Source of the DNA: Thalia democratica
Lineage: Eukaryota
Assembly: GCA_965202585.1 (NCBI GenBank)
Contig: OZ241829.1
Location: forward strand, 18,166,001 to 18,230,000
Reading direction: 5' to 3'
DNA length: 64,000 nucleotides
Both the position numbers and the translations under genes were made by a program. Below are positions 9,501 to 63,390 of this stretch, in pieces; position 1 is the stretch's first letter, and each line of letters begins with the position of its first letter. The notes beneath the pieces were generated by a model. That model made no database searches and was not told where the DNA came from. It saw nothing but the letters and a program-made list of their open reading frames with translations.

Positions 9501-10641
9501 TCTATTCAACAACAACCTGTAACTGAATAGTCATTTTAGTTTACTTGAAAAAAGTGCTGTAGATTTTTGCAGGTCCGCACGTTTGTTCGGTGTCTCTTCC
9601 GGGAAAGTTCAGGTTTCAGTCGGTCGGCAAGTCCCTGCCGGGAACCAAAGTTCGAGTCGATCATCAAAATAACGAGGTAAAACTAAAGTAATGTCCTCAT
9701 CACAAAAAAAAATTTTAGCTAGATTGCAGACTTGTTTTGATTCTACGAAATGATTTGCTTTTATAAATTTTGATGTCAACTTTTGGTATTGACTAAGGTG
9801 ACAATAACAGCATAAATTTTTTTTGAACTACATAGTGTATAACAAATACATCTTTTGACGATGCTAATTTAATGTTACTAAATTCTTCTTTTCTATTTCT
9901 GCTAACTAGTCATTGAAAAATAACTTGATAAAAACAATTTTCAGATTTGTCTGTGGGGTCGAAACATTTGCATGGGCTACCTGAGCATGGGTGAAGAAAT
10001 GAAGGGCTGCTATGACAACCAGGGGTGGCTCATGACCGGAGACAAGGGTCATTCCGATGAAGATGGCTTCTTGTTTGTAACGGGAAGACTCAAAGGTTGG
10101 AAAGTTTCAAATTAGAATATTACAGTAAAATGTCAGTGTTTGATAAATATCTTCTTCATTAGAAAAAGTTGTTTTGTATAAGATGTGTGACTTCTAAAAA
10201 AAGGGAATGGTAATAATTAAGTAATGGTTTAAGTAAATATATAAGTGCTAAAACTAAATGTTTTGAAATTAAATGAACAACAACTTAAAAATTTACTTTT
10301 AAATCTTATTAAGTCTTCGTTTTTATCGTACTTTCTTAACTTTAATAACATTGCAAAAAATCATTTTAAAATCTTTTTACAATCCAACGTGTGTGATCAT
10401 AATATTTACTTATTATATTAAAACTTTTTTAATCTGAAAATAGTTTTACTTATTTATTTTTTTAAACATTATGTGCAAACTCAACACTCACACTTTAGAT
10501 TTGATAATAACATCCGGTGGCAAAAACGTCCCATCGTTGAGAATTGAAGCTTCAGTGAGAAATCAAATACCTGATGTTATTCAAAATTGTTTTGTTTTGG
10601 GCGATTCGAAAATCTTTCTTTCTGTTCTACTAACCTTTCAT
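6507..10641 (+). pseudogene. ACSBG: Long-chain acyl-CoA synthetase, bubblegum family (ACSBG-like), likely pseudogene
   Basis: Exons 6507-6595, 7016-7133, 7413-7502, 7722-7871, 8158-8319, 8549-~8719, ~8974-9163, 9573-9676, 9945-10095, 10499-10641. Motifs: GIYTTNS, FTSGTNGKPKGVMLSHDN, SYLPLSHI, VPRVWEK, LGLDRC, EMYGLSE, ICLWGRNICMGY, GWLMTGD, GRLKDLIITSGGKNV. In-frame stops TAA 7026-7028 and TGA 8597-8599. No 5' or 3' terminal exons recognised. Confidence 0.82.
7637..7670 (+). repeat. 10-bp minisatellite (TATACATCGG)x3 in an ACSBG intron
   Basis: Direct reading of the sequence. Confidence 0.8.
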
Positions 10642-10931
10642 GTGCGTTTCAAGTAATTTTTTTTGTTAATCAAGTTTAGATATAATAGCACAAATTTACA
10701 CGTAATTTGCATTTTGTGGACTAAATTACTAACTATTTTACAACAAAAAAAAGCACTTATCACTAATTATACCATTTTTTTTTTAATTTTCTTTCAACAA
10801 TCTTTTTTAAAACAAAAAGTATTATTAACTTTTTCTACAACTTGTCGGAATAATAACTTACTATTTGTTTACTTGCAACATGTAAAACACTTTATTAACC
10901 TAAGTTTATCTATGATAATTTTTTTTATAAT

Positions 10932-11165
10932 ACGCGTTTATCGGATTATGTCTGGAGCTTTTTTCACAGGTATGGTAAAAGGCCAAACATGGAGTGGAGT
11001 ATTGTTTCAAAGATCAAACATGCATCCAACGGAGTAAGTAGAATTTGCCCAACTTGCAATACAGAAAGAGCAGTAATTGCAGCAGAAGATAAAGACCTAC
11101 TTCTGTTTAAGCGGCAAGATTTATCGAATATTTGTCTCCACAACCGACGATTCTACTTTAAATAA
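10932..11165 (+). mobile_element. Penelope-like element fragment (C-terminal part of GIY-YIG endonuclease)
   Basis: Manual translation TRLSDYVWS..MEWSIVSKIK..RICPTCNTER..LFKRQDLSNICLHNRRFYFK*, matching the other two PLE fragments. Confidence 0.7.
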
Positions 11166-13462: not shown

Positions 13463-13677
13463 TCACAGCTCAGTGCAAGTAACAGGCGGTTGCCAACCGT
13501 CATGTTCCGAGCAAGTCGATTCGCCGTCGTTCGCAGCTACAAAGCCAGCACTACATGTGTACTTGACCGTAGTTCCAACAAAGAAATCATTTCGCACTTT
13601 TCCACCTGCGTAATTGTTTTCATTCGAAAACTCCCTACTGGAAACATTATCGTAATCAGAAAAATCTCTTGGGCATG
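13463..13677 (-). CDS. Terminal CCP exon 67 with stop codon
   Basis: phase-1 acceptor; CPRDFSDYDN..VKYTCSAG..TCSEHDGWQPPVTCTEL*; TGA at 13463-13465. Confidence 0.85.
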
Positions 13678-16600: not shown

Positions 16601-19600
16601 AAAGCCCTAAAAGTTAGCTAGATTGCGTTTCATTTTTTTTTAGATACAATATAGCTTTGTGTTACAATAGCAACTTAAAAAGATTAGAAATTACCTTTAA
16701 CACATTGAGGTATGTTCGAGGTATTCCAACTTCCGTCTTCCTGACAATAATAAACGAAATCGCCCTCATACAGCATCGAGTAGCTTTCCTTGCAAGCGTA
16801 CTCCAAAATTAAAGCCGAGTTGTAGATTGGATCCCTGCTCAAGACTTTTTTAACCAAATTGTAATGTTCAAGATCGTCTTCACTTATTGGTGAGGTTGGA
16901 CATCCTGCGGTTAGTTTTCAAAAATTGGTAAAATTAATGTTGCATAAAAAATAGTAGTTATATGTGATATATTGTTTCTTAATTGAAAAATATAAAAGTT
17001 ATAGAGTTTTTAACCTATTAAATAAAGGTATTTCAAGCAACTTAAGAAAAATTCTAGATCGTATTTAAAAAAACTAGAGAAGTGCAATACTTGACCATTT
17101 ATTTGATTGTAAACTGTGTCAGACTCAATAAAAATTCTATAAAGCGGTAAGTTTACAGCTTTCTAAACTTAAACTTTCATTTACTTTATTTCAAACATTA
17201 CACTACATTTAATTTTAAAATGTACCTTTTTCACAAGTACATATTGAGAAGAAAGTGTGTTAGCTAAACAAAATTTCAAGCTCAAAAACGTTTGTTTCAC
17301 CTATATAAACACACGATGGCGGGTCAGGAGTAAAAGAGTTGGTGTTGTGATCGCAGTTTACATAAGAAACTGATCCCTCTTCAATTTTGTACCTCGGATC
17401 GCAAGAGTACTGCACTTGCTGGACAACAGTGATGCTTCCTCTGTATTCATCCCATAATTCAACAGAGCTACTAGGGGTCCAACGACCCTTTTCTATTTCT
17501 TTAGGGTCTCCACACGCTACAAAGTAAAAGTTGTTGAAAACAGAAACAGCAATATTTTTTAAAAAAAGCTTAGACAAGTTAGATAATAAATTTGATAAAA
17601 AAAGTGCCTACAGCTGTTAATTGGAGGAAAAAATGTTTAAAGAAAAAGTCAAGTAAAGTTTTTTATTGCATAAATTGATGGCATAAGAGGGTTGAGAAAC
17701 ACTTTTTTAAATTTAGTCTTATTTTTTACATAACTAGATAAGCTAGTTGTTACTTTTTATCGCTTATTAAAATTCAAAGTAGTTTTTAGATATAAGCGAT
17801 CAAAGTTAGAGCGTTCAATAGGTTCTTTCTGAGAGGCGGAAATTAAAAGATGAAAGTAGACTGTCTTACTAAAAACCTATATCCTTCAGCAGTTTTTGAG
17901 CAGCTGTTTTAAGACTTTTTCACAATAAAATAAAATTTGTTCTTTTTTTCTAAAAATTTGAATTAAATTATTTTGAAAGTGAAGGAGGAAATAGATTTTT
18001 AGTAAATTTTTCAAAATTGCGAAGAAATTATGAAGAATCAGCTAACATAACCTTGAAAATTTTTGCTTCGATACAGTTGTATCGGAAAATTTTTACAAAA
18101 ATTTTTATGTTTTAATAGTTAACTGAAATTTTTTTTTGTTCAATTTTCTATAAAATGTATCGTATATTCTAAGCTTTAAAACAGGAGCCAACATTAGTTT
18201 TTTTAAAAAAAAATGTTTGACCCCCTCCCCTTCTATGCCCTTAATGTGATTGAAAAAACTCTATAAAACTATGAAAAAGTGAAGTAAAGACTTGGTAGAA
18301 TAGAAAGTTTGTAAAAGATTTTTTACAAAAATATTAAACCGCTTCTCGAAATTATTTAGTTGTTAACCTGTTACAACAGTTGTGTTGTGAACTGCTTCCA
18401 AACAAATTATTAGAAATAGAAATGAGAAAATATTTCAAATTAATTAAATATGTTTTTGTTAAAGTTGGACTTTACTACGTAATTTGTATTTTATTTTTAA
18501 TATAAGTTTTTTTTTTCTTTATTATTTATTATTTGATAACAATATTGATAGCAAACGCATAATTATTACTGGTAAGTATATTTACTACTATTAGTAAATT
18601 TTTAAACGTTAAACTCAGCTTACATAAAAAGTAATTAAGTTATGTAGTTAGTAGAAATTAAAGTACACACATTAGGCAAGTGAAAAATAATAATATGCAA
18701 TTAAAAAAGTAAACTTTCTATTGGCTTAAAGTTTAGATCATGTGTACTGGAGTACGGAGCAATATCTGCTAGGTTTTTACACCTTGTCCATTCGGCGCGG
18801 AGACCATTTTCTGGACGTTTGTGACTCACTAGGGCGTATGATTGCCTTTCTGTGGTAAAACATATTAGTTACACACAAAATCAAAAACAATCAGTTCAGG
18901 ATGCAAAAATTTAGCATTAACTATGAGTTTGTAAAAAAAAAATCATTTTTAATAATAAACGACTTGATTTCACAAAAACCAATACTTGATGTATAAATTG
19001 AAAGTAGTTTTATGTTGAAATTATTAAACAAAACCTAAGGAATCATCCAAACTATTTTTGAAAGTCTTTTAACTATTTATTAAAAGTGCAAAAAATAAAT
19101 AATTAAAAACGCTTGACTAAAAACGAATAAATTAAATCATTTAAACATTAAGCACAAAACTAAAATATGAAAAACCCTTAATTACTTTTTGATATTATTC
19201 TTAGTTTGAATCACGATTGACAGCTTTAAACTATTAAATCATTATTTCCAATTAAAAAGTCGATGAAAATAATGTCTGGTGATACTTTTAAGTCTGATTT
19301 TTGTCCGTTGTTGTTTTTGAAACTTTTTTTCAACTGTGCATTTTTAAATATCTATGAAAAGTAACTTCAACTAATTTATTTAAATTTTTAGGTTTAGGTT
19401 GTATTGATTTAACAGTTGTAACGGTTGTGATATTTGATTTTGAATAAAATGTTTACGGTCAGACAGTGACACGAATTCTAAAAAGCTTAATAGTTTAGTA
19501 AAATTTATATTAAGACTGAAATAAACTTGTTATATACAACATATTTCAAGCCTTGTGATGACGTTCTTCGGATTAAAAATAAAAGTTAATTCTATTTACT

Positions 19601-22600
19601 TACAGTTGATCTTAATAGAAGATTTAGACTAAGTTATAAATAATAAACATAAACTATCAAAACGCTTCTCATTAAACAGTACAACTTTTACCTACAAGTA
19701 CATTTATTACAATTAAAACTATATACTAATTTAGAAAATAATAATTTAAAGTTTTTTGGAGTCTTAAATGACATAGTGTTAATGGTTTCATCATAGTATG
19801 TTTAAGACTCAAAAGCATTTATACGGTTTTTATGTGTTTAATAAAACAAATCAATGACTGTAACTATTTTACTAAAATTACTGTTTAAAAAACTCATTAA
19901 AACAACAATCAAAAAGGCAACCCTACAAGGTTGGGTGTCGAACTAAGCCGAGGATCGGCACCTTTTATGAGCAACGGGTGTATTTTATAGATCAATGATC
20001 AGATTAAACTAAAATAATTGTTTGCCGGCAGTCATAGTTTCGTTGAGTTTAGTGTAAATAAAAAAAAAAACATAATGTTGCAAAACTAAATAGTTAGCAA
20101 GTTAGCTCTTTTTCTTATTTACTATTGTATAAACAACATATTTTAAACTTAAAATACAATATAACACATTGCTGTTCTAAGAAACTATCTTTAACAGATT
20201 GCAGTTTGCTAAACTAAATTTAATTTGGGTAGATTGATTTATAAAAGTATACTTCAGTTTAAATGTACACCTGTAAAGTAAAATAAACTACTTTATAAAA
20301 TTTATACCAATTGTGCTATCAGGTCGTTTATAACAAAAAAAGAAACTATAAACGAAATAAAAATACAAAAAGAAACCTCCATAAAACCTAAAGCCAGTAC
20401 AACGATCTTGTAATGCGCCTAAATTGTCTATCAGGTAATTTACTTCGTCCATTTGATTCGCTGTAAAGTCTCCCCAGTCTATAGCATCAACCACACCTAT
20501 AATAACCACTTCAAAATCTTTAGCATTATTTCTTATATAATCAGACATACTTCCAAGCTGTAACAAAAAAGATATGTGTTAAAACTAGCTTTAGAAAAAA
20601 ATAGAGTATAACATTAATAAGTAAATGTTAATACTGATTCGAAATTGCTATAAATTAAAATAATAATAAATCATTATTAAACTTTGAACATCAACAAATA
20701 AAAATTTTGGCTAAAATTAAATTAATATGTGATTATAACTAAATATTTAACCGTTTAATTCTTTTAGTACTTCCAAGTGTAAAAGGTAAAAAAAATATAT
20801 TTCAACTTTAATTAATTTATAAACAAGTGTTAGAAAAAAAACAAAAAAAATTAAAATGTTTACAACTTATAAAACATAAAAGCACTACAAAACTTAAAAA
20901 ACGTTGTGATAAGTATCAAAAACAAGGCATAATAGTAAAGTTTTCAATTGATACCTGACCACGGACAAAAGTATTTTCCAAGTCAACAGTATAAGTGTCA
21001 AAAATTTCATACTTATACATGAGGTATTTTTCGAACGGATTCAAAATGATAACGTTGAACCCTCTGTTATTTGAATCAGCACAAAAGGATTCGTTTTCGT
21101 TCACCGTGACTTCGCAACGAGAAGTCTGTTTGTATTCTCCAGCCACGTCCTCTGTTACACTGAAACTCGAGGCGCGTACGTGAAGATCTAAGTCTGATTA
21201 ATTTTTAATATATCAATATTTTTATCCAAAAAGTTTATTTTCTTGTTAAAATTTCCAATCAACAAAAACAACTTTGAATTTTAATAGTTTTTTGATAGCA
21301 CTGTGAAATTAATTCTAACTTCTTATGCACAGATGATCTCCTGAAAATTCAAGTCCAGGTGTCACCCATGATCCAGTTTTGTCGCATACAATCCCATCAA
21401 AACCGGGTGGGCTCATCAGAAAACCGTCGCTGCAAGTGTAGTGCACTTTGGTGCCTTGCAAGTACAAGCCTTCATCCGAAATCCATTCTATTCTCGAGCT
21501 TGCTCTTGAAATATTCAGAGAGGGAGGTTTTTCGCACTCTGAAAAAAAAATAATTGTGTTTTATAGTTTAACTTTTTTATTATTATGATATACCTCTTAA
21601 ACACTGAAAGCTGCTGTAGCTTGTCCAAGCCGGGCCTTCTATGCATTTGTAAGTAGTGTTTGATGCTTCTGGAGTTAAAGTGTGATTTTCTTTGCAAGTG
21701 TACTCAGCAACGAACTCTAGTGTAATTGTAGACAAAACCACTTGCTCGGGTACATTTTTAATAGTGCCAGGTATGTTCGGCGATTTTCCACAGTCTGAAG
21801 GTATACTTTAGCATAAGGAGTATTTTTAGAAAAAGATATGATAAAGATATGTTAAAGCTTTTTTAAGAGATGGTAAAGTTTTAAACGAACAATACTTGTT
21901 TAAAATTATTTCTTGACCGAGTCGTTCTTTTCTACACTAACTATAAAACAAAACATGCATGTAAGTATTTTAACACAACCTTAGACTTGTAAAATAAAAC
22001 AAGAGTAAGGTCTGAGACTGTATTACAAGGCATTTAAAAATAACATATATTAGCTAATTTGTAAAAAAATATGTTGTCAAAAATATAAACTAAAGAAAGA
22101 AAAGCAAAAATATTTTTTAATCAAAATGAAAACCTGGATAACACTGAAAAGCTGGGGTCCATTCACCATCTTCACCGCAAGTCAATTTCGTAACTTTTGG
22201 CGCGAAATTTTCATCACATTTGTAATCCAGTTCAGTGCCACTAAAATAACTACCACCACTACTTACCGGTTTAGTAATACTGTGAGACTCAGTATTGTCT
22301 ACGTTCGGTATTTCGCTGCATTCTAAAACGTTTCCAAAATCGGTATCATTTCAAGTTTCATGCTAATTACTTTTTTAAACTTATTTGAAAATATTTTGTT
22401 TAAATAAAAAAAAAATTATTCAGCTTTAAACAATTCTATACAAGGTAAAGCAAATAATAAAATTTTAAAGTATATCGTTATAAATTAGTTGTTAAAACAA
22501 ATACAACACTGCTTTTTAATAAAGTGTATTAAGCTTATCCGCTCCACCTTAAATCAGTTTATGAAATAATAAGAAATTAAAATATCTAAAAAAAACCGAG

Positions 22601-55600: not shown

Positions 55601-58600
55601 TTAAGTTTATTCGTAAGCTTTGTATATAAAAATCCAGCATTTGCCTCTGATGACTTTCACCGATGTTTTCGTGTATCACTCTTTGACAAATATTAACGTT
55701 ACTAATTTAAAGAATTTATTATCTTTTTAATAAAGCCTATCAGTTTTTTAGCTTTTATGAGCTTAAACCTTAGCAAGTTTTATTAATTTTTATACAACGA
55801 CTACACTTTTCAAGCAAAGCTGTGTGTTTTACTACTTTTTTGTATCATAAAAAAACTAACCTTTCACACAGTTAAACTCATCACCACTCCAAAAACCGCC
55901 TTCTAAACAATTGTAATCGGTACTTGCAGACGCAGGTGTTGTTATAAACGGTTCTATGCAAGTGTAGGAAACTTTTAGCTCTATTTCTAAATTCTCATCT
56001 ACTTTGTTCGTTTTATGTACATGTTTATCTGCGTTAGGTACATTTGGCGAACGACCACAACCTATAAAAAGGTTAGTAAATATCTTTCCATTTTATTAAA
56101 TTATCAATTACATTTTTCAAATATAAATACAAGCAGAAAAAGTAATAATAAAAGAGTAAAAACTTTTATAAAATTTAATGTTGATGGTTAAAACTTTTAA
56201 ACTATCGTAACTAAAAAAGTTTTTGACTTGTAAAAATTATATTTACTAGTAAAGCATTGTATGGGCGGATCCCAAACTCCATCGACACTGCAGGCAGATT
56301 CGTAGTTGCTCTGATCGTAACCCTCGTTACACCAGTATTCTATTGCGGTTCCTGCTAAATACACACCGTCTCTTTTGTTCTCATTGATAAATGAGTAGAG
56401 GAAGGTGAATCTTCCTGATGGATCATAGTTTCTAATTACACCGCATTCTGCATAAAAAGGAATTTTATTGTAATTTTAAAACGGAAGTTAGCTGCAGCAG
56501 ATGTATCCATCGATTTTATGTAGTACTGATTTTTAATAACCAAAGTAGTAAATGTAGTATTTTAATGTCTTTAAGCCTTATCATAAAATCAAAAACTAAA
56601 AATCTTAACACTTTGGCCTTAACAAATGACAGATTTTGCTGCAAGTTATAAATTGTTCATACCTTTTAAACAGGTAGGCAGCTCTTTAGGGGTCCATAGT
56701 TCGCCCAAGTTGCACTCAAACCTCATGTTGGCAGTCTCATCGCTGAGATGATACCCCTCAATACACTCGAATTCAACAACATGGCGTACCACATCTTCAG
56801 TAGCGGAAACATTGAGCTCAAGCGTGTTGTAGTTAGAGTTTTCAATTAAAGGAGGCTGGTCACAAGCTTAAAAAAGGTTTTGCCTTAAATAAAAACTTGG
56901 CTTAAGTTCGTAGTAAACTTGGCACTAAGCTTTAATTTTGTAATAAAATATGAAATAAGAATCTTTGGTTTTTTCAAACTTTATAAATAACTGTTAGACC
57001 TACTCCTTTATTTTTATATGTTTTGAAATTTACATATTTAAGTTAGATTTTTCTCACCTTCTTTAACTCGTAAAACTTATTAATACTGTAAAGCTATAGT
57101 ATTAAGTTTTTTAACATGGTTCTTACATCTTAAGTTAATACCACTCACCCGGAACACAACGTGGAGCGCGATCCACGTCCCAGCTGCCATCTCTGCCACA
57201 AGTCGTTGCTCCAATTTCGCCCAGCGCCAGTTTGTGCGCAGCGGAGGTGCAAGCGTAGGTCACCCGGGTGTCGGTCCAAAATTCCCCTTTTCTGTGACTG
57301 AACGTGATGTTCCAACGAGTTTGGTTGTTTTTGGGAAGAACATCGCACTCTGTTTTATGGTTAAAGAAAAAAAAAGGTTCAATAAAAAGAACAATTGAAA
57401 ACTATAACATATACTTTATTATGATACAACATGTTATAAATAAAAACTAATGAAATCAAAAATAATACTATGGTGTATAATGTTTTATGTTTTATTATTT
57501 AAAACTTAATGATAGAACTTTAAATTTATTTAAAATTTCAGACTTAAAATTTTAGGTTTTAACTTAAAAAGAAGTGCATAAACTTCTTTAAATACTGTAT
57601 TTGAAAAAAATACCTTTAATGCAAATAGGCACGACAGAATTGTTATATAACCCATTTTTTAAACATTCTAAGACATAATTATCTGCCATGCCAGTGTGGA
57701 ATTGGTATCCTTCATCACAAACGAATTTGAATGTGTCAGATTGCACATACAAGTCAGCACGAGTTTGGATAACAACAATAAGTTTTCCGTCTGGTATTTC
57801 ATCGAGTGCTGGACATTCTATAAAAATAATAAAATCACTTTGTTACACGAAATACTCAATTATAACACGTCAAAAAATTTATCTAGATTCTTGACACTTT
57901 ATACTTATTACTTAGTATATATAAATTGAAAAGTTTCAAAAATCAATAAAATGAAAGTCATGATTATTAAGAAATAAACTTTTCAAGCAAGTCGGAAAAG
58001 TTGAGTTCCAATCTCCGTCTTCGTTGCACCTAATTGCTGAAAGTTGAGGATCATCAATCGCATACCCCTCTTCACAAGACATGTACAAAACAAAGTCAGT
58101 TACGAAAAGTTCATCATAAACACTAGTTGGTGCCATTTGTAAACCAGTTGTCATATTAAATCTAGGACATTCTGTTAGTTTAATTTATTGAGATTTTAAC
58201 AAGATATACTTTAGTAAACGTTTGTTTATTGAATTTTAGTTAACTAGTCTGCAACGCTTAATACATTAACATATATTTAAAAGTTCTTTTGAAAGTAAAA
58301 TAATTTCCACTTTTGTGTTGATAGAATTTTAGATTTTATGGAAAAGTTCTAAAAAAAGCAACCTAAAACTAAACTTACTTTGTCCGCATTTAGGAGCGGT
58401 TTCGTGACTCCAGGTGCCATCTTTACCGCAGGTAAGAACTTCAGGTTGGTTGTACTTGAAAGAGTATCCTACAAAACAAGTGTAAGTAACCTTAGTACCG
58501 CTCCAAAACACGCCTGCTTGGTAACTGTAGTCTACTGTCATTGTTGATAGTGAACCTTCTGGTGGAGACGGACATTCTGGAAAGCAAAGTTTTTAGCTCA

Positions 58601-61600
58601 GGAAAATTAGATTTAATTTTAAGCAAATTTAGTACTCATTAAATCCTGACTTTTTATTAGTTATAAAATGTATATTAGAAAAATTTATCAGTATTAAATA
58701 TTTTGGGTCTTATCAGTAGTTCTAACAAACTAAAGTTTAGTTGTTTTTTTTTTTTGCATTTAGAAATACCTTATGTAAAAAGATTTTATGCTTTTGCTTA
58801 AATTCTAATTAGAAAAACCAAACAAAAAACATTGTTTACTTTTAAATAAGGTGCATAAGGTAATATTCGTTATTAAATTAATGAAATTTCTAAATAACTG
58901 ATTCATGGACTATAAAACACTAGCGCAATATTTTATTAAGACTAAAACCAACTTAATAAACTTTCAACAAACTACCAACTTTTTAAACAAACAGGATATG
59001 ACGGCTCAAATTTTCCAGTTTTTTCATTGCAATTCAATTCAGCCGGCAGTTCAGATGGTTTGCTGAAACCTTCATTGCAAGAGTACAAAACTTGATGTGG
59101 AATTGCTATTTCAAACGACGATCCAGAGTAGGACACAATGACATTTTCATACAAAGTCGTTTTGAACTTTCCATTTTCGATGGGCTTAGGTGTGCCACAA
59201 TCTACATAATGGACTTGGCGTATACTCATTTTATAAGGTTAAAAGGAATTAAAACAGTATTAATTACAAAAACCTTTTGAGGCCATTTGAAATTACTAAC
59301 TTTAACACTTAGGTGGAAATAAGCTTTAAACTAAAGTCAATGCACATAGTTTATATATAAATTATTAAACTAAAGCTGTGATAGGGCTGAAAAAAATAAA
59401 CCAAGATAACAAATACGGCAACTATTTTTTCTATGTAATAACTTATTTTACCTGCGTAGATTAACTATTCTACGTTTAATTAAAAGCTTTAATTTTGTCA
59501 CTAATAGCGCTTCAACCGACCTTTGACACAAAAAGGAGTAGAAATGCTCCACTCGCCGTTTTGTAAGCATTCAGCAACCAAATTTGTCGAGTCGCTGAGA
59601 ATATAATTTTCAACGCAGCTAAACTTGACAGTTGCTCCGCTGAAGAGCTTACCGCCATAATGAGTTTCGCTGCTAGAATTTATAAGCAGACCTCCAGTTG
59701 GTACTATCTCGGTGCACTCTGAAACAAAATCAATGTAAAGGATTAATAATACAACCAAAAAAATATATATCTTACTATGCAAGCAGCTAAATTCCTCTTT
59801 AGTCCAAGACCCTCCATTGATGCAATTATACGTGGTTCCGGCGTTTTCAGGAACTAAGTAGTAAGGCTCTCGACAAATATAAGACACATTGAGCTCAACT
59901 TTTGTTTCAAGATCAACTTCAAACTTTTCATTGACAGTTTTCAATGCGTTTAGTATATTTGGTGAAGGACCACATTCTTTTAATTAAAACAACTTTTTTA
60001 GTTTGTTTAGAAAATAAATAAAGATTTTATATCATAGAATAATTATCTTTTATATTTTAACTACTACTTATCTTAAAAAATTCTTACCAGGATAGCACTC
60101 TATGACTGGATACCATTTACCATCAACACCACAAGTAGAAACTGTTGCGTTTTGTACGTAATTATCCTTGCAAATGTACTCAACAGAAGTACTATTTAGA
60201 AGAATGCCGTTTCTTTCGTTTGTGTTTGTAGTTTTGTTGGATTTGGTTTTTTCAACAACTGGAGTATCATCACACTCTTAAAAATTTTAAATATACAGAG
60301 ACAAATAAATACTACATACTTACGAAGATTGTTTCAAAATACCTGAAAAATTCTATTAGGTAAAAAAAAAGTTAATATTTGCATTCATTAGTTATTCTCT
60401 GCTTAATATTTAAACACTTATTTATTATTTAAAACTTTAAAACCAAGTTTTAGAATTATTCCAGTTTATCATCATAGCTTTTTATATCTAAATCTCAAAC
60501 TAAATGAAGTAGTTTATTATCAAAGACTTAACAATACATTGGTAAAGATGAGCTAAAAGATAAATTTTGTATAATGTGAACTTATTTATCTACCTTTTAT
60601 GCAAAATATCGGATCATTAGGTAACCATGAGGATTGTCTGTTGCTGCACTCAGATCGAACAACAGCAGATTCGTTGCTCAGATAATAGCCGGGTTTGCAA
60701 GAATACTCAACAACATACAACTCTACAACCCCACTATCTGATGTTTCAAGGTCTATTGTCATGATGTTCGAGTTTTCTACAATAGGAGGATTTTCGCAAG
60801 CTAAAAAACAAAAAAAAATATAATAATTAAAAAAAAAGCTATATAAATAGTTGTAAGTATAAAGTTCGTTTAAAAGCAAACTTTTCAAAGTTATTTGTTT
60901 TTAAATATAGCTACATGAGTAAATAAAAATGTGCAAATTAAATATTTTAATTACTACCAGATTTCGGTAGTAATTAGGTATTCGCAAAAAAATACAACCT
61001 TTTCAACTAAAATAAAATAGTAAACTGCGCATAACAATGTTGCACATTTTGATTTGCACATTTTTATTTTTATAAGTTCTTTACATTTCAGTAAATTGAG
61101 CAATCTTTTTTAATTAAGACAAGTAACTATATATAGCTACTATATAAAACAAGTTTTTTGTAGCATTAAAAAACTTCCTAAAACTTTTTTTTTTGAAAAC
61201 TAATAAACTACTCAGCAAAATAAGTATTAAATATTTATAATAAGACGGACTAACGAAACTAAGAGATCAAAACAAAATAAAACTGCAGTGCTAAACCAGT
61301 TTTGATATTAACAGATATGTTTTTTTCTTATATATTTATTTATTAAATTTTAACCCGGAACACAAGTAGGAGCGAAATCATGATCCCAAAGTCCGTTTCT
61401 GCCACAAGTCAGCTTTTTAGGCTCGTTCCATTTGGGAGTGAACGAAGCGTTGCTGCAAGCGTAAACTACTTGGGTTCCAGTCCACATTTCACCATCTATG
61501 TGGCTGAATGATACCTTCCAGTAGACTGAATCACCTTCGGGTGGACTGATGCAATCTATCGGTTTGTTATTTTATTTTACAACATATATACTTTATCGTT

Positions 61601-63390
61601 TACTTAAACCAACTGTAGGCAACTAAAATTCAATGTTAAAGTATACCGGGTATTATTAAAAACGACAAACTTTACTTACAAATTAGCTTAACACAAGAGG
61701 CGATTATTTGAAATCATTACAAATTAAAATATTTAATTTTACTACTTGTGATGCAAATAGGAACATTTGTGTTGTTATACGATCCGTCTTCTAGACACTT
61801 GTATATGTAGTCATCAGAACTTCCCTTGTGAAACATGTAACCTTCATCACAAGCATAACTAAAAACGTCATTACTCAGATAGAAATTAGCACGAGCTTGG
61901 TTGACAGAGTGTAACTTTCCGTCCTGCACCTTTTGGAGTGTTGGACATCCTGCAATAATTTAATGAAACAAATTTAGCAATCAAATTACGTTTTAGAAGT
62001 AAAATTTAGCATCATTTAATTAAAGCAAAGAATCAAAGCTTTGTACAGTTAAACGGATATTTTATCTTTACGAACAAAAACTATGCAATTAAAATTTTAA
62101 CCGAGTTTATAGTACGAATAAATTAGTTTTATATGTGGACTGTAGAAATAACTGGATAAGTTTTAACTCTATAAATTTTATTATATGTTTTGGTTTTAAG
62201 AAAATAAATAGAGAGATCTCAACTACTGGAGGAGAAATAATGAATTTATTCTTTTAAGAATTTATTTGACTAACTAAGTTTCGGTCAAAGACCTCGTCAG
62301 TGCTTAAATAATTTCAAAATTTCTTCTTAAAAAACTAAACAAATCAAATTTTAATATTATGACTGAGTTTAAGGTAAATTTTAGATTTTAGTTAAGTTTT
62401 AAAATCAATATAACAACAATAATAATAATAATAGCTGTATGTAGCTTTCTTTTTCTTCTAGTTAATTTACAAAGTAAACATTACTTAAGCAAAAGTGTAA
62501 TTAATAAAGTGATCTTAAAATTGAGTTGAATTTAATGTAGCTTATTTTTATTTTGAATATTTATTTTATTTATATGAATATAAATTTTATTATGACTTTT
62601 CGAAAAATTTTGTGTACAAACGTTTTAGTGTCAAAATATACCTTTAAAGATAAAAACTAAAAGTAAAATAATACTTTAGAGAGTTAAACATTATTTGACA
62701 TTAGAATAATTTCTTTCAAACTATATAAATGAGACTCAATTTTTAGAACAAGATATATTTCATGCTTCTTTCATCAGTTGAATACTAAGCAATAAAAATA
62801 AAAATAATAATATTATAACTTTAGAGAGTTATAATAGAAACGACTACATAGCTAACAGTTACATTTTCTTAGCATAAGTGTTAGTTAAATTCATTAATTA
62901 TTATCTAATAATAAATAAAGTTAAACAAGTTACAAATACTGAGATGTAGTTGCAACGACATATTTAACCGGTTAAAAAACAAGTTGCTCTATGGTGTTTA
63001 CCAGATATGATAAAAAAAAAGTTTGTTAATAATTCTAATATGCATGAATTAGATTTATTTTAGAAACTGTGTACAACAAGAAAATTTTTCTTAATTAAGC
63101 ATACCAGAATATATAAATAGAAAAATAAATAATCTAATTCTAAATATTAAGCATTATTATATGTTTAATTTAAAAAGCAAACAATGCATGCTTACTTTTT
63201 TTGCATTCAAAATCAAATTCACTCCATTGACTGTTACTTTCACACGACAGAACAGCTGGGTTGATGTCGCTAAAACTAAAACCTTCTTCGCACATGTACC
63301 TGACTTCCGCGCCTTCCAAAAATTCCCCTTCAGTAAAACCGTAATCAGCAACCAACCTCATGTTCAGCCCTTCAGGAGGTTGTTGACACT
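13463..63390 (-). CDS. Giant multi-sushi/CCP protein with two ILEI/PANDER-like domains (5'-incomplete; 67 exons, ~4,400 aa in window)
   Basis: 67 exons traced manually, each with an AG acceptor and GT donor. All internal CCP exon lengths are multiples of 3 (phase 1-1), and no in-frame stop was seen before TGA at 13463-13465. CCP exons carry the C..C..C..W..C pattern. Individual exons are listed below; class letters A-H are my own labels. Confidence 0.9.
14089..14349 (-). CDS. CCP exon 66 (atypical: 6 Cys, RRKR)
   Basis: phase 1-1; CDVDPIACETGLPCPDP..WVRRKRWVSC..WWPYPLPKCLR. Confidence 0.85.
14530..14745 (-). CDS. CCP exon 65
   Basis: phase 1-1; CPEPPKISEY..WSPKTAPNCGL. Confidence 0.88.
14882..15322 (+). 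mobile_element. Penelope-like element GIY-YIG endonuclease fragment (intronic, antisense to host gene)
   Basis: C..NCPV..YCL.NVIYQAKV..HIGSTKRTFK.KYNEHK..LWDL..IEWKIV..LCNLE..LNKRNELVTQCPH. Confidence 0.82.
16251..16445 (-). CDS. CCP exon 64
   Basis: phase 1-1; CPLLDVPDGS..WNNTNEAICMK. Confidence 0.88.
16695..16904 (-). CDS. CCP exon 63
   Basis: phase 1-1; CPTSPISEDD..WNTSNIPQCVK. Confidence 0.88.
17301..17516 (-). CDS. CCP exon 62
   Basis: phase 1-1; CGDPKEIEKG..FTPDPPSCVYI. Confidence 0.87.
17680..18240. mobile_element. Kolobok-like MITE copy
   Basis: Left GGCATAAGAGGG, right CCCCTTCTATGCCC|TTAA; internal block similar to the 2.1 kb and 26.5 kb copies. Confidence 0.6.
18715..18849 (-). 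CDS. Exon 61: ILEI/PANDER-like domain 2, part 3
   Basis: phase 1-1; RQSYALVSHK..EWTRCKN..FKPIE; donor position less certain. Confidence 0.7.
20377..20557 (-). CDS. Exon 60: ILEI/PANDER-like domain 2, part 2
   Basis: phase 0-1; LGSMSDYIRNNAKDFEVVIIGVVDA..NLGA..CTGFRFYG. Confidence 0.78.
20955..21187 (-). CDS. Exon 59: ILEI/PANDER-like domain 2, part 1
   Basis: phase 1-0; LHVRASSFSV..RGFNVIILNPFEKYLMYKYEIFDTY. Confidence 0.8.
21320..21538 (-). CDS. CCP exon 58 (unique)
   Basis: phase 1-1; CEKPPSLNIS..WVTPGLEFSGDHLCIR. Confidence 0.87.
21594..21794 (-). CDS. CCP exon 57 (class E)
   Basis: phase 1-1; CGKSPNIPGT..WTSYSSFQCLR. Confidence 0.88.
22134..22322 (-). CDS. CCP exon 56 (class D)
   Basis: phase 1-1; CSEIPNVDNT..WTPAFQCYP. 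Confidence 0.88.
22632..22829 (-). CDS. CCP exon 55 (class E)
   Basis: phase 1-1; CGPSQDIPNT..WVYNDFQCLQ. Confidence 0.88.
25112..25447 (+). mobile_element. Penelope-like GIY-YIG fragment nested in the hAT element
   Basis: Open frame not in the ORF track: KEYIGSTGSQFKKRWYAH..TELSKYIW..RWS..CKTCNLEKIEIALA..LNKRQELFYTCPHFRKF*. Confidence 0.85.
25750..25798 (+). ncRNA. Type I minimal hammerhead ribozyme (Penelope-associated)
   Basis: Stem I TTTACAGGC/GCC(T)TGTAAA; core CTGAAGA 25759-25765; stem II TCCC-TTAG-GGGA; GAAAC; stem III loop ATT; cleavage triplet GTA 25786-25788. Confidence 0.82.
26483..27000. mobile_element. Kolobok-like MITE copy nested in the hAT element (right end not resolved)
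   Basis: TTAA|GGCCATAGGGGGG start, shared internal block, and an internal inverted repeat (~26680-26730 vs ~26905-26955). Confidence 0.55.
29077..29274 (-). CDS. CCP exon 54 (class E)
   Basis: phase 1-1; CGLSRAITNA..WVFKEFECLS. Confidence 0.88.
30817..31011 (-). CDS. CCP exon 53
   Basis: phase 1-1; CADPPKGQNV..WPHTEAPTCLR. Confidence 0.87.
31147..31329 (-). CDS. CCP exon 52
   Basis: phase 1-1; CENPPPVLYN..WKHAVGCLR. Confidence 0.85.
31737..31862 (-). CDS. Exon 51: ILEI/PANDER-like domain 1, part 3
   Basis: phase 1-1; THHSWVVVTGRFPEHAPVPSWAEC..FSFD. Confidence 0.75.
32484..32652 (-). CDS. Exon 50: ILEI/PANDER-like domain 1, part 2
   Basis: phase 0-1; LERMAAFIEDNSNYGDVIVMAVRG..AKIG. Confidence 0.78.
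32920..33104 (-). CDS. Exon 49: ILEI/PANDER-like domain 1, part 1
   Basis: phase 1-0; TFHVYALSAGYG..RGTGVAIINPLTDTVQYNRFDTM (RG-x-V...FDT motif). Confidence 0.78.
34392..34583 (-). CDS. CCP exon 48 (unique)
   Basis: phase 1-1; CPYPPLEGRS..WDRSTPPACTP. Confidence 0.88.
34848..35036 (-). CDS. CCP exon 47 (class D)
   Basis: phase 1-1; CDDIPTVKNA..WTSIFQCYP. Confidence 0.88.
35199..35402 (-). CDS. CCP exon 46 (class C)
   Basis: phase 1-1; CEVPPYTQNS..WEPEEIISCIK. Confidence 0.88.
35698..35895 (-). CDS. CCP exon 45 (class B)
   Basis: phase 1-1; CPSPPVGDYV..WDFQNAPECAP. Confidence 0.88.
36574..36777 (-). CDS. CCP exon 44 (class A)
   Basis: phase 1-1; CSKLDDIPNG..YNNTREPLCIT. Confidence 0.88.
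37193..37390 (-). CDS. CCP exon 43 (class E)
   Basis: phase 1-1; CGPSPTIPNA..WEKNEFECLK. Confidence 0.88.
38567..38755 (-). CDS. CCP exon 42 (class D)
   Basis: phase 1-1; CNEVPTILNT..WTPTFECYP. Confidence 0.88.
38898..39098 (-). CDS. CCP exon 41 (class E)
   Basis: phase 1-1; CGSSPNIENT..WVTNEKFECLN. Confidence 0.88.
39994..40182 (-). CDS. CCP exon 40 (class D)
   Basis: phase 1-1; CKEIPKITNT..WTPTFECYP. Confidence 0.88.
40295..40495 (-). CDS. CCP exon 39 (class F)
   Basis: phase 1-1; CKQVELSQAL..WNVTAPYCER. Confidence 0.88.
40703..40900 (-). CDS. CCP exon 38 (class E)
   Basis: phase 1-1; CGSSPSILNS..WVNEKFDCLK. Confidence 0.88.
41097..41285 (-). CDS. CCP exon 37 (class D)
   Basis: phase 1-1; CNEIITINNA..WTPFIQCYP. 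Confidence 0.88.
41562..41765 (-). CDS. CCP exon 36 (class C)
   Basis: phase 1-1; CEVPPYVPNS..WEPKKLISCIK. Confidence 0.88.
42031..42228 (-). CDS. CCP exon 35 (class B)
   Basis: phase 1-1; CPSPPVGDYV..WDFQNAPKCAP. Confidence 0.88.
42714..43995. mobile_element. hAT-like non-autonomous element
   Basis: TIRs CAGGGTTTGTGTGCGCA / TGCGCACGAACCCTG; subterminal GCCTGA motifs; flanks AGAATA/AGAATG only partly TSD-like. Confidence 0.65.
42813..42983. mobile_element. Mini Kolobok-like MITE nested in the 42.7 kb element
   Basis: GGGTATGGGGGG ... CCCCTATGCCC|TTAA. Confidence 0.5.
44273..44476 (-). CDS. CCP exon 34 (class A)
   Basis: phase 1-1; CRKLDDILNG..YNNTKEPLCIT. Confidence 0.88.
44580..44777 (-). 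CDS. CCP exon 33 (class B)
   Basis: phase 1-1; CPSPPTGDNL..WDFQNAPKCIP. Confidence 0.88.
45681..45884 (-). CDS. CCP exon 32 (class A)
   Basis: phase 1-1; CHKPDNIPYG..YNNNRKPLCIT. Confidence 0.86.
46371..46583 (-). CDS. CCP exon 31 (unique)
   Basis: phase 1-1; HRCIEVPSVT..WRSVPATAVPMCGK. Confidence 0.88.
46940..47125 (-). CDS. CCP exon 30 (unique)
   Basis: phase 1-1; CGAPPKKDNM..WQGVVGNCYS. Confidence 0.88.
47349..47558 (-). CDS. CCP exon 29 (class H)
   Basis: phase 1-1; CGFPKNITNG..SLNAPKCVT. Confidence 0.86.
47720..47920 (-). CDS. CCP exon 28 (class F)
   Basis: phase 1-1; CQKIILRDKL..WNVTAPYCVK. Confidence 0.88.
48290..48487 (-). CDS. CCP exon 27 (class E)
   Basis: phase 1-1; CGPSQDIPNT..WVYNDFKCLQ. 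Confidence 0.88.
48661..48849 (-). CDS. CCP exon 26 (class D)
   Basis: phase 1-1; CNRIPTITNA..WTPTFQCYP. Confidence 0.88.
49010..49213 (-). CDS. CCP exon 25 (class C)
   Basis: phase 1-1; CEVPPYVPDA..WTPKKLISCVK. Confidence 0.88.
50106..50303 (-). CDS. CCP exon 24 (class B)
   Basis: phase 1-1; CPSPPEEEYV..WDFQNAPKCAP. Confidence 0.88.
51077..51280 (-). CDS. CCP exon 23 (class A)
   Basis: phase 1-1; CSKLEAIPNG..YDNIITPLCIT. Confidence 0.88.
51381..51578 (-). CDS. CCP exon 22 (class G)
   Basis: phase 1-1; CPKVEISSKV..WNSTFPTCHI. Confidence 0.88.
51942..52145 (-). CDS. CCP exon 21 (class E)
   Basis: phase 1-1; CGSSPTFPQT..WDIASINCLK. Confidence 0.88.
52710..52880 (-). CDS. CCP exon 20 (class D, short)
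   Basis: phase 1-1; CDKIPSVENS..WRPTMECIP. Confidence 0.88.
53400..53606 (-). CDS. CCP exon 19 (class C)
   Basis: phase 1-1; CSVIPLVNNS..WSFTRLPQCVK. Confidence 0.88.
53912..54109 (-). CDS. CCP exon 18 (class B')
   Basis: phase 1-1; CPSPPEGSLS..WSHKSAPECRQ. Confidence 0.88.
54392..54598 (-). CDS. CCP exon 17 (class H)
   Basis: phase 1-1; CGAPDNIEDG..FRPRPVCVK. Confidence 0.88.
54909..55097 (-). CDS. CCP exon 16 (class F)
   Basis: phase 1-1; CKEIEATEAL..WNVTANSCVK. Confidence 0.88.
55861..56061 (-). CDS. CCP exon 15 (class E)
   Basis: phase 1-1; CGRSPNVPNA..WSGDEFNCVK. Confidence 0.88.
56247..56447 (-). CDS. CCP exon 14 (class D)
   Basis: phase 1-1; CGVIRNYDPS..WDPPIQCFT. Confidence 0.88.
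56663..56866 (-). CDS. CCP exon 13 (class C)
   Basis: phase 1-1; CDQPPLIENS..WTPKELPTCLK. Confidence 0.88.
57149..57349 (-). CDS. CCP exon 12 (class B)
   Basis: phase 1-1; CDVLPKNNQT..WDVDRAPRCVP. Confidence 0.88.
57614..57817 (-). CDS. CCP exon 11 (class A)
   Basis: phase 1-1; CPALDEIPDG..YNNSVVPICIK. Confidence 0.88.
57980..58171 (-). CDS. CCP exon 10 (class G)
   Basis: phase 1-1; CPRFNMTTGL..WNSTFPTCLK. Confidence 0.88.
58379..58576 (-). CDS. CCP exon 9 (class B')
   Basis: phase 1-1; CPSPPEGSLS..WSHETAPKCGQ. Confidence 0.88.
58980..59201 (-). CDS. CCP exon 8 (class H)
   Basis: phase 1-1; CGTPKPIENG..FEPSYPVCLK. Confidence 0.88.
59521..59718 (-). CDS. CCP exon 7 (class F)
   Basis: phase 1-1; CTEIVPTGGL..WSISTPFCVK. 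Confidence 0.88.
59776..59976 (-). CDS. CCP exon 6 (class E)
   Basis: phase 1-1; CGPSPNILNA..WTKEEFSCLH. Confidence 0.88.
60088..60276 (-). CDS. CCP exon 5 (class D)
   Basis: phase 1-1; CDDTPVVEKT..WYPVIECYP. Confidence 0.88.
60594..60800 (-). CDS. CCP exon 4 (class C)
   Basis: phase 1-1; CENPPIVENS..WLPNDPIFCIK. Confidence 0.88.
61355..61555 (-). CDS. CCP exon 3 (class B)
   Basis: phase 1-1; CISPPEGDSV..WDHDFAPTCVP. Confidence 0.88.
61746..61949 (-). CDS. CCP exon 2 (class A)
   Basis: phase 1-1; CPTLQKVQDG..YNNTNVPICIT. Confidence 0.88.
63196..63390 (-). CDS. CCP exon 1 (B'-like)
   Basis: phase 1-1; CQQPPEGLNM..WSEFDFECKK. Confidence 0.88.

What the first reader, a model, noticed from the sequence alone, without database searches (positions are those of the whole stretch)
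13463..63390. Giant secreted-type protein of at least 61 CCP modules plus two ILEI/GG-lectin-like domains: candidate new family
Seen: architecture (CCP)48+-ILEI-(CCP)7-ILEI-(CCP)6-stop, ~4,400 aa in the window with the N-terminus still outside it. There are many N-glycosylation sequons, and no EGF, vWA, pentraxin, CUB or transmembrane segment in the traced part. Known: human CR1 has 30 CCPs in its common allotype, factor H has 20, and SVEP1 has about 34 alongside other domains. I do not know a characterised protein pairing long CCP arrays with ILEI domains. Inference: a rod-like extracellular glycoprotein for complement-type regulation, glycan recognition, or matrix/tunic/mucus scaffolding.
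Basis: partly seen in the sequence, partly recalled or inferred. Interest (0 to 1): 0.88.

Follow-up and report, generated by a model that had tools for sequence, protein, structure and literature searches.

The report
Giant sushi-repeat rod with lectin-like modules
A marine animal's gene encodes at least the last 4,400 residues of an enormous rod-like protein: 61 "sushi" (CCP) beads with two sugar-binding-type ILEI domains spliced in, a combination of familiar parts that I found described nowhere, and whose expression and function remain untested.

Summary
On the minus strand, 67 collinear exons (63390 down to the TGA stop at 13465-13463) join into one 4,420-codon frame with no internal stop: 48 CCP, ILEI, 7 CCP, ILEI, 6 CCP.

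- **CCP modules:** all 61 are single phase 1-1 exons with four invariant cysteines. 55 hit Pfam Sushi on their own. No further CCP exon exists in the window.
- **ILEI domains:** each non-CCP insert is a three-exon, frame-neutral cassette. They are true ILEI/FAM3 homologues (hhalign 96.8% to PF15711-bearing proteins, which in turn hit the POMGnT1 stem, FAM3A/B/C and TMEM2).
- **Sugar-binding site:** ILEI2 keeps the POMGnT1 Arg/Asp/Arg triad. ILEI1 keeps only the first Arg.
- **Relatives:** three marine-metagenome contigs from related genomes keep the CCP-ILEI adjacency, and their exons are under purifying selection (omega about 0.3).

Not shown: transcripts (no RNA run holds the gene), the N-terminus or signal peptide (outside the window), and any function.

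My best reading is a stiff extracellular CCP filament carrying lectin-type heads. It is a new domain architecture of known modules, not a new fold.

First readers of this scan noted similar CCP+ILEI genes on other DNA of this genome. Those notes are unchecked.

The parts
34392..63390 (-). CCP1 to CCP48: 48 single-exon Sushi/CCP modules, each phase 1-1, separated by introns of 57 to 2,044 nt. The N-terminal continuation lies beyond the window.
   Evidence: Exon coordinates are (also in notebook entry 2). Pfam Sushi on single exons. Local HMM count. Module types follow the pattern ABCDEFGH AIBCDJFGH AKELIBCDMFGNOP BC BCDMFG MF MF BCDM Q.
32920..33104 (-). ILEI1 exon A (enters in phase 1, leaves in phase 0). 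Carries the Arg-Gly ... Phe-Asp-Thr core motif.
   Evidence: Splice sites. Profile hits to PF15711 proteins. hhalign 96.8%. 58-60% identical to the L001 orthologue.
32484..32664 (-). ILEI1 exon B (phase 0 to phase 1). The acceptor is either 32664 or, more likely, 32652. Gly stands at the position of POMGnT1 Asp179.
   Evidence: The alternative acceptor matches the ILEI2-B boundary, and conservation in L001 starts there.
31737..31862 (-). ILEI1 exon C (phase 1 to phase 1). His stands at the position of POMGnT1 Arg207.
   Evidence: Identity to L001 is 68% and 66%.
29080..31329 (-). CCP49, CCP50 and CCP51 (exons 31329-31147, 31011-30817, 29274-29080). A very high-copy repeat sits in the intron at about 29600-30400.
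22830..29079 (-). Largest intron (6,250 nt), filled with transposon debris.
   Evidence: Weak LINE-type endonuclease hit at 23605-23877 on the plus strand. The related contig L002 joins the CCP51 flank to the CCP52 flank without about 5.7 kb of this intron.
21320..22829 (-). CCP52 to CCP55 (exons 22829-22632, 22322-22134, 21794-21594, 21538-21320).
   Evidence: The CCP54 and CCP55 orthologues in L006 and the CCP55 orthologue in L002 lie directly upstream of ILEI2.
20955..21187 (-). ILEI2 exon A (phase 1 to phase 0). Carries the Arg-Gly ... Phe-Asp-Thr-Tyr core motif.
   Evidence: About 65-70% identical to L002 and 51% to L006.
20377..20557 (-). ILEI2 exon B (phase 0 to phase 1). Asp is kept at the position of POMGnT1 Asp179.
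18715..18849 (-). ILEI2 exon C (phase 1 to phase 1). Arg is kept at the position of POMGnT1 Arg207.
13463..17516 (-). CCP56 to CCP61, six unique C-terminal modules (exons 17516-17301, 16904-16695, 16445-16251, 14745-14536, 14328-14089, 13677-13463). The protein ends five residues after the last cysteine, with no anchor sequence.
   Evidence: CCP60 is atypical (79 aa, extra cysteines, no Pfam hit).
13463..13465 (-). TGA stop codon. An ATTAAA lies about 125 nt downstream.
   Evidence: Read directly.

Best explanation
One very large minus-strand gene encodes the C-terminal 4,416-4,420 or more residues of an extracellular protein that works as a stiff filament carrying lectin-type heads.

**Shown:**
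- 61 CCP modules sit one per phase 1-1 exon, and nearly all are joined by 3-residue linkers.
- The array was built by old higher-order duplications, with periods of about 9 and 10-12 modules.
- Two ILEI (FAM3 / POMGnT1-stem type) domains are inserted as three-exon, frame-neutral cassettes near the C-terminal end.
- ILEI2 keeps the Arg/Asp/Arg triad that binds beta-GlcNAc in the POMGnT1 stem. ILEI1 has Arg/Gly/His at those positions.
- CCP and ILEI exons are under purifying selection in related marine genomes.

**Inferred:**
- The CCP array is a long acidic glycosylated spacer, roughly 0.2 micrometre if extended, with repeated protein-binding faces.
- ILEI2 binds GlcNAc/mannose-type glycans. 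ILEI1 is structural or has another ligand.
- The protein thereby ties or recognises glycan-rich material: extracellular matrix, tunic, mucus or foreign surfaces.
- Secretion is inferred only from the domain types.
For: - **Single open frame:** 67 phase-compatible exons join into one frame.
- **Module count:** exactly 61 CCP modules, all on one strand.
- **ILEI homology:**
  - The exon-A profile hits proteins with 4-6 Pfam ILEI domains at E 7e-8 to 3e-5 in 1.84e9 sequences.
  - An HMM of 15 bacterial ILEI repeats hits only residues 3188-3316 and 3828-3969 of the model, across all three exons. E is about 1e-8, and the best of 4,000 shuffled decoys scores 12.7 bits.
  - hhalign gives 96.8%, E 2.9e-10.
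  - The same bacterial profile hits POMGnT1 stem 5GGJ at 5e-25, and also FAM3A/B/C and TMEM2.
- **Sugar-binding triad:** mapped through, with the residue numbers from PMC9802357. The ILEI1/ILEI2 difference is kept in relatives L001 and L002.
- **Collinearity in relatives:** CCP-ILEI-CCP order holds in L001, L002 and L006.
- **Selection:** omega is 0.36 (0.27-0.48) for CCP exons and 0.31 (0.23-0.40) for ILEI exons.
- **Physical features:** linkers are 3 aa in 54 of 58 junctions. pI is 4.8, sequons are enriched, and there is no hydrophobic segment.
Against: - No transcript evidence. No RNA run holds the gene, and the three candidate runs laid on it were empty.
- The N-terminus, and so the signal peptide, is not in the window.
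- All CCP exons and both cassettes are frame-neutral, so exon skipping could give much shorter products.
- Single ILEI exons give no direct Pfam hit.
- No structure could be predicted, because the tools take no spliced sequence.
- ILEI2 evolves fast against the closest relative L002 (omega 0.73, CI 0.42-1.23).
- The eponymous Gly-Gly motif is poorly kept.
- Nothing here shows a ligand.
Confidence: 0.5

Rival explanations
1. It is an immune recognition or complement-type molecule. The long CCP array would bind C3-like opsonins, pathogens or allogeneic cells, as CR1, factor H and the tunicate CCP receptors do. The ILEI domains would add pattern recognition of microbial or foreign glycans.
For: CCP arrays with higher-order repeats are the hallmark of CR1-type receptors, and a periodicity is seen here. 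CCP copy number seems to differ in relative L002. ILEI2 evolves fast against L002, as recognition domains often do.
Against: Nothing specific to complement was found or could be tested. The RCA motif pattern of PMC6683126 could not be run. There is no membrane anchor at the C-terminus. The repeated exons are old and conserved rather than hypervariable: DNA similarity is confined to exons and omega is about 0.36.
Confidence: 0.2
2. The locus does not make one 4,400-residue chain. It is either two or three adjacent CCP genes, for example split at the 6.25-kb intron, or a gene whose symmetric exons are heavily skipped. The real products would then be much shorter, and CCP and ILEI parts may not always be joined.
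For: There is no RNA evidence. Every CCP exon and both ILEI cassettes are frame-neutral, so an intact joined frame is expected even for separate units. Several donor sites are weak.
Against: All 67 exons share one strand and order, with no exon of any other kind between them. No internal exon carries a start. Relative L002 shows the 6.25-kb gap is a transposon-swollen intron between adjacent CCP exons. CCP-ILEI-CCP collinearity over short introns holds in L001, L002 and L006.
Confidence: 0.15
3. It is a decaying or silent repeat array (pseudogene) with no present function.
For: No RNA run holds the gene. Introns carry transposons.
Against: A 13.3-kb spliced frame without a single stop or frame break. 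Four cysteines invariant in all 61 modules. Purifying selection against several relatives.
Confidence: 0.03

Closest known systems
Complement receptor 1 (CR1/CD35) and other long CCP-array proteins (factor H, SVEP1/polydom, CSMD1-3)
   Same: Long runs of Sushi/CCP modules joined by short linkers. The array was built by duplication of multi-module blocks, giving a higher-order periodicity.
   Different: - At least 61 modules are traced here, against 30 (CR1), 20 (factor H), about 34 (SVEP1) and 26-28 (CSMD).
- The period is about 9-12 modules, not 7.
- There is no transmembrane segment, CUB, EGF, vWA or pentraxin domain in the traced part.
- Two ILEI domains are present.
- No orthology was shown.
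Selectins and other lectin-plus-CCP mosaics (C-type lectin + EGF + CCP stalk)
   Same: The same design logic: a carbohydrate-recognition domain is held on a stalk of CCP modules.
   Different: The lectin-type module here is ILEI, not a C-type lectin. It sits inside the array near the C-terminus, not at the N-terminal tip. There are two of them, and no EGF or membrane anchor was seen.
ILEI/FAM3 superfamily: FAM3A-D, POMGnT1 stem domain, GG domains of CEMIP/TMEM2 (Pfam PF15711)
   Same: Homologous domain. ILEI2 keeps the Arg129/Asp179/Arg207 sugar-binding triad of POMGnT1.
   Different: Known members are small secreted proteins, or domains next to glycosyltransferase or hyaluronidase-type modules. 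None that I found is embedded in a CCP array. Here the domain is a three-exon phase 1-1 cassette.
C. elegans FAMP-1 (two tandem FAM3-like domains; PMC9802357)
   Same: Two ILEI-type domains lie in one protein, and only one keeps the full sugar-binding triad. In FAMP-1 only that one bound GlcNAc and mannose.
   Different: The rest of the protein is unrelated. The FAMP-1 domains are adjacent, whereas here they are 7 CCP modules apart.
Bacterial multi-ILEI proteins (e.g. Microcoleus WP_333377365.1, P0009)
   Same: These were the best long hits of the exon-A profile, with 4-6 Pfam ILEI repeats each.
   Different: They are bacterial and have no CCP modules. The high rank comes from summing several weak repeat matches (about 15-21 bits each). 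It is not a sign of gene transfer.

Membership tests
Sushi/CCP/SCR module (Pfam PF00084) | A module of about 60 residues with four invariant cysteines | tested here: met
   All 61 exons have the four cysteines invariant in the alignment. The Cys1-Cys4 span is 54-77 residues, mostly 60-66.
Sushi/CCP/SCR module (Pfam PF00084) | Match to the Pfam model | tested here: met
   55 of 61 exons match singly at E<=0.01, best 7.6e-11. Sampled scores of 23.5-34.2 bits exceed the 20.7-bit cut-off. The other six match only the local HMM.
ILEI/FAM3 domain (Pfam PF15711) | Significant sequence or profile similarity to proteins that carry the Pfam domain | tested here: met
   E 7e-8 to 3e-5 in a 1.84e9 library, and those hits carry PF15711 at 1e-79 to 1e-138. 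E about 1e-8, covering model positions 2-134 of 149; hhalign 96.8%.
ILEI/FAM3 domain (Pfam PF15711) | Direct hmmscan hit to PF15711 | tested here: inconclusive
   Single exons gave no hit at E<=0.1. Each exon holds only about a third of the 90-position model. The spliced domain has no reference and could not be submitted.
ILEI/FAM3 domain (Pfam PF15711) | Three-layer beta-beta-alpha fold as in FAM3B/C and the POMGnT1 stem | not testable with these tools
   Structure prediction takes only unspliced window sequence. The POMGnT1 stem is nonetheless the top PDB hit of exon A alone (E 0.24, 0.074).
Lectin-competent ILEI (POMGnT1 stem type) | Arg129, Asp179 and Arg207 equivalents present (PMC9802357) | tested here: met
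   For ILEI2 the residues are Arg, Asp, Arg, and they are kept in relative L002. For ILEI1 the test is not met: Arg, Gly, His, and likewise in L001.
RCA complement regulators | Ordered motif pattern M5-M3-M1-M2-M4 over three CCPs (PMC6683126), and C3b/C4b binding | not tested
   The motif matrices and the CoReDo server are not available here. Binding needs experiments.
Selectins | C-type lectin + EGF + CCPs + transmembrane anchor | tested here: not met
   Every exon in the traced part is CCP or ILEI. There is no hydrophobic segment. The N-terminus is unknown.
SVEP1 / CSMD mosaics | vWA, EGF, pentraxin or CUB domains interleaved with CCPs | tested here: not met
   None lies in the 4,420 traced residues. 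The N-terminal part outside the window is untested.
CR1-type long homologous repeats | Array made of tandem multi-CCP blocks | tested here: met
   Mean module identity peaks at offset 9 in CCP1-24 (0.38 against a background of about 0.25) and at offsets 10-12 in CCP23-48 (type string). This is an analogy of construction only. The period differs from CR1's 7, and no orthology was shown.

The most novel reading that the evidence does not exclude
In this pelagic animal (a salp, by unchecked scan notes) the ILEI domain has become a mobile three-exon lectin cassette shuffled into many giant CCP genes. This would create a lineage-specific class of lectin-tipped CCP filaments hundreds of nanometres long. 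These would form or cross-link a glycan-rich extracellular material, such as the tunic or the mucous feeding net, whose protein make-up is unknown. This gene would be a two-headed member of that class.
Probability: 0.2. Interest if true: 0.75.

Novelty: new variant of a known kind. Interest (0 to 1): 0.48.

Why it matters
If transcribed as one chain, this would be among the longest CCP arrays traced, with at least 61 modules and more upstream. It is also the first case I could find of ILEI/FAM3-type domains built into a CCP rod.

It offers a clean natural example of exon shuffling: a three-exon, frame-neutral lectin cassette dropped twice into an array of frame-neutral CCP exons.

It also offers a testable pair of ILEI domains, one with and one without the sugar-binding triad. 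That could help settle what the poorly understood FAM3/ILEI fold does outside vertebrates.

If it belongs to the animal's tunic, mucus or immune surface, it is a candidate component of materials that matter for ocean filter feeding.

Tried and rejected
- **Pfam on single ILEI exons** gave nothing.
- **PDB search with the exon-B profile** gave only noise.
- **ESM Atlas on exon A** gave beta-helix look-alikes at low recognition. I treat these as noise.
- **phmmer with each spliced ILEI domain alone** did not reach the bacterial ILEI proteins. Only profiles did.
- **Three long hits of the big search** (P0012, P0016, P0017) have incoherent Pfam tables typical of biased sequence, and I dropped them.
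- **RNA evidence:** both run searches found only DNA-like holders. Laying the three same-sample or same-study runs gave no coverage and no splice joints.
- **Horizontal transfer of ILEI from bacteria:** I considered this because the best long hits are bacterial. I rejected it as unsupported. Their rank comes from summed repeats, and POMGnT1 matches exon A about as well per domain.
- **Recent duplication or assembly artefact for the repeated CCPs:** rejected. DNA similarity between copies is 81-92% and confined to exons, while the introns have diverged.
- **Hidden extra or decayed CCP exons in the large introns:** none found.
- **Full-length annotated homologues:** none could be searched, because the word-indexed protein search is limited by query length and takes no spliced query.
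- **Taxon:** it could not be verified here.

Full report
**What is in the sequence.** The window is AT-rich (GC 0.24-0.38) and has the look of an intron-rich animal genome. Stop-free segments with four spaced cysteines lie almost only on the minus strand between 13.4 and 63.4 kb. I applied a simple rule: a four-cysteine module, the nearest AG acceptor in phase 1 upstream, and the first GT donor in phase 1 downstream. This gave 61 exons of striking regularity. The acceptor lies 2 nt before the Cys1 codon in 59 of the 61 exons. The donor lies 7 nt after the Cys4 codon in 57 of the 60 that have one. All CCP exons have lengths divisible by three.

Two gaps in the series hold three further exons each. 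Their splice sites run phase 1 to 0, 0 to 1, and 1 to 1, so each trio is frame-neutral (492 and 549 nt). Joining all 67 exons gives 13,262 nt, or 4,420 codons, with the only stop at the very end. That stop is TGA at 13465-13463. One acceptor is ambiguous by 12 nt (ILEI1 exon B, 32664 or 32652), and the second choice looks better.

**CCP identity and count.** The 61 exon translations align with four invariant cysteines. 55 of them match Pfam Sushi on their own at E<=0.01 (sampled scores 23.5-34.2 bits against a cut-off of 20.7). An HMM built from them finds exactly these 61 modules in the six-frame translation of the whole window. It finds none on the plus strand, none in introns and none outside 13463-63390. 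So no hidden or decayed modules exist, and no other exon types are needed to keep the frame.

**ILEI identity.**
- Single exons of the two inserts give no Pfam hit, as expected, since each holds about a third of the 90-position model.
- A two-sequence profile of the first exon of both inserts was searched against 1.84 billion protein representatives. It found 19 proteins at E<=1e-3.
- Thirteen of these are short ORFs (47-108 aa). All those looked up come from marine metagenome assemblies.
- Three are long proteins (P0007, P0009, P0015; E 7e-8 to 3e-5) that carry four to six Pfam ILEI domains each (PF15711, E 1e-79 to 1e-138). One is a cyanobacterial protein named as ILEI domain-containing.
- An HMM of their 15 repeats was searched against my spliced model and 4,000 shuffled decoys. 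It hits only residues 3188-3316 and 3828-3969, the two inserts, across all three exons. E is about 1e-8, and the best decoy scores 12.7 bits.
- Profile-profile comparison of the exon-A family with the bacterial repeats gives 96.8% probability, E 2.9e-10.
- The bacterial profile in turn hits the POMGnT1 stem domain (5GGJ, 5e-25), FAM3B, FAM3C, FAM3A and TMEM2.
- The POMGnT1 stem is also the top PDB hit of exon A alone, although that hit is not significant by itself.

I take the ILEI/FAM3 homology as established.

**Sugar-binding residues.** PMC9802357 states that Arg129, Asp179 and Arg207 of the POMGnT1 stem bind beta-linked GlcNAc directly. It also states that these residues are kept in FAM3 proteins, and that a C. 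elegans FAM3-like domain lacking two of them does not bind sugars. In the printed alignment of 5GGJ, the chain index plus 86 gives these three residues as Arg, Asp, Arg, which fixes their columns. Through the same consensus columns, ILEI2 has Arg, Asp, Arg and ILEI1 has Arg, Gly, His. The pattern is conserved in relatives: L002 keeps all three in ILEI2, and L001 has the same losses in ILEI1. This is the only piece of evidence here that bears on function. It points to glycan binding by ILEI2.

**Relatives and selection.**
- L001 (4.5 kb, Tara Oceans) carries two CCP exons, the three ILEI1 exons and the CCP49 orthologue on one strand. Across these exons aa identity to the window gene ranges from 41% to 68%.
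- L002 (3.0 kb) carries CCP51, a partial CCP52 and CCP54, CCP55 and the three ILEI2 exons. DNA identity is 72-82%, including introns.
- L006 carries CCP54, CCP55 and ILEI2-A separated by short introns.
- L002 joins the flank of CCP51 to the flank of CCP52 without about 5.7 kb of the 6.25-kb intron of the window. That intron holds LINE-type debris. This argues that the large gap is a swollen intron and not a gene boundary.
- Pooled Nei-Gojobori estimates give omega 0.36 (bootstrap 0.27-0.48) for CCP exons and 0.31 (0.23-0.40) for ILEI exons. dS is saturated for the distant contigs.
- Against the closest relative L002 alone, ILEI2 gives 0.73 (0.42-1.23), so fast evolution or relaxed constraint of that domain cannot be excluded.
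- The exon-A alignment separates an ILEI1 type from an ILEI2 type, each with several distinct metagenomic variants. The two-cassette state is therefore old in this group.

**How the array was built.** Neighbouring modules share about 25% identity. Module identity rises at offset 9 in CCP1-24 and at offsets 10-12 in CCP23-48. The type string reads ABCDEFGH, AIBCDJFGH, AKELIBCDMFGNOP, BC, BCDMFG, MF, MF, BCDM, Q, [ILEI1], RSF, FMFT, [ILEI2], UVWXRY. Some copies reach 85-94% amino-acid identity. Even so, DNA similarity between copies is confined to the exons and a few tens of flanking bases. The duplications are therefore not recent, and they are not an assembly artefact. The construction resembles the long homologous repeats of CR1, but with another period.

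**Physical features.**
- The traced part is 497 kDa before glycosylation, with pI 4.8.
- It has 69 N-X-S/T sequons, against 48.6 +/- 6.7 expected.
- It has no hydrophobic stretch fit for a membrane span.
- It ends five residues after the last cysteine.
- 54 of 58 CCP-CCP linkers are exactly three residues. This is at the short end of what is known for CCP proteins (my knowledge) and suggests a rather stiff rod.
- At about 3.5 nm per module (my knowledge), the array would span roughly 0.2 micrometre.

**What could not be tested.** Both searches for sequencing runs found only runs that hold exons and introns alike, that is, DNA. Marine metagenomes also hold the sequence, so the animal is planktonic. 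The three runs of the same samples or study that might have been RNA gave no coverage and no splice joints on 29000-34999. Expression, the single-transcript claim and exon skipping are therefore open. The first exon in the window has no start codon, so the signal peptide and the true module number are unknown. I could not verify the species. Earlier scan notes call it a pelagic tunicate, probably a salp, and I use that only as context.

**Mechanism and rivals.**
- Best reading (0.5): an extracellular, stiff, acidic, glycosylated CCP filament that presents one competent and one altered lectin-type ILEI domain near its C-terminal end. It would bind or cross-link glycan-rich material. The design logic is that of selectins and other lectin-on-CCP-stalk proteins, with a different lectin fold.
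- Immune or complement-type role (0.2): this has only generic support.
- Several shorter products from the locus (0.15): not excluded without RNA. Collinearity in three relatives and the absence of any start-bearing exon speak against separate genes.
- Pseudogene (0.03): unlikely, given the intact 13.3-kb frame and purifying selection.

**Comparison and novelty.** The modules are ordinary members of the Sushi and ILEI families. The combination is not ordinary. Three full-text searches found no paper that pairs FAM3/ILEI terms with sushi/CCP domains. The big profile search returned no annotated eukaryotic protein with this ILEI type. The limits are real. That search would miss distant single-domain relatives, since FAM3 and POMGnT1 themselves were not recovered. 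An InterPro architecture query could not be run. I therefore rate the finding as a new variant of a known kind.

**Context from the scan (unchecked leads).** First readers noted the same three-exon ILEI cassette on this stretch (s1-311269, which I confirm). They also noted:
- a head-to-head pair of giant CCP genes running over the high end of this window (s1-287234);
- another ILEI inside a CCP array about 58 kb further on (s1-287334);
- a second locus with about 61 CCPs and two ILEI domains on another piece (s1-291883);
- CCP genes ending in C-type lectins or F5/8C, and ILEI cassettes inside MAM domains.

If these hold, this gene is one member of a lineage-specific expansion of lectin-bearing CCP filaments. 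That raises the interest of the class as a whole and lowers the uniqueness of this locus.

Noticed in passing
window 10899-11162 (+), 14876-15319 (+), 25106-25444 (+): Three plus-strand ORFs share a C-terminal cysteine motif and, by eye, a GIY-YIG-like start. Two of them sit in introns of the CCP gene. None has a Pfam hit. They are probably a repeated mobile-element family.
   Followed up: partly
window 29600-30400: Contig depth in DNA run X1 is 1e5 to 1e6, against about 600 in the flanks, with many rearranged joints. This is a very high-copy repeat inside the intron between CCP50 and CCP51.
   Followed up: no
window 23605-23877 (+), within the 6.25-kb intron: A weak endonuclease/exonuclease/phosphatase hit (E 9e-4, below the Pfam cut-off), probably LINE-type debris. 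The related contig L002 lacks about 5.7 kb of this intron.
   Followed up: partly
window about 7700-10112 (+): By eye, the pieces look like an AMP-binding / acyl-CoA synthetase gene, convergent with the 3' end of the CCP gene. Single pieces give no Pfam hit.
   Followed up: no
window 3744-4064 (+): A weak ISXO2-like DDE transposase match (E 6e-4, below the cut-off).
   Followed up: no
L002:1006-1272: The relative seems to hold only remnants of CCP52 and CCP54, and no CCP53, between CCP51 and CCP55. This is either a copy-number difference between F-type modules or a metagenome assembly collapse.
   Followed up: partly
P0007, P0009, P0015 (bacterial proteins): Bacteria, including a Microcoleus cyanobacterium, encode proteins of about 900-970 aa made of four to six tandem ILEI domains of about 150 aa each. 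These match the POMGnT1 stem at E 5e-25.
   Followed up: partly
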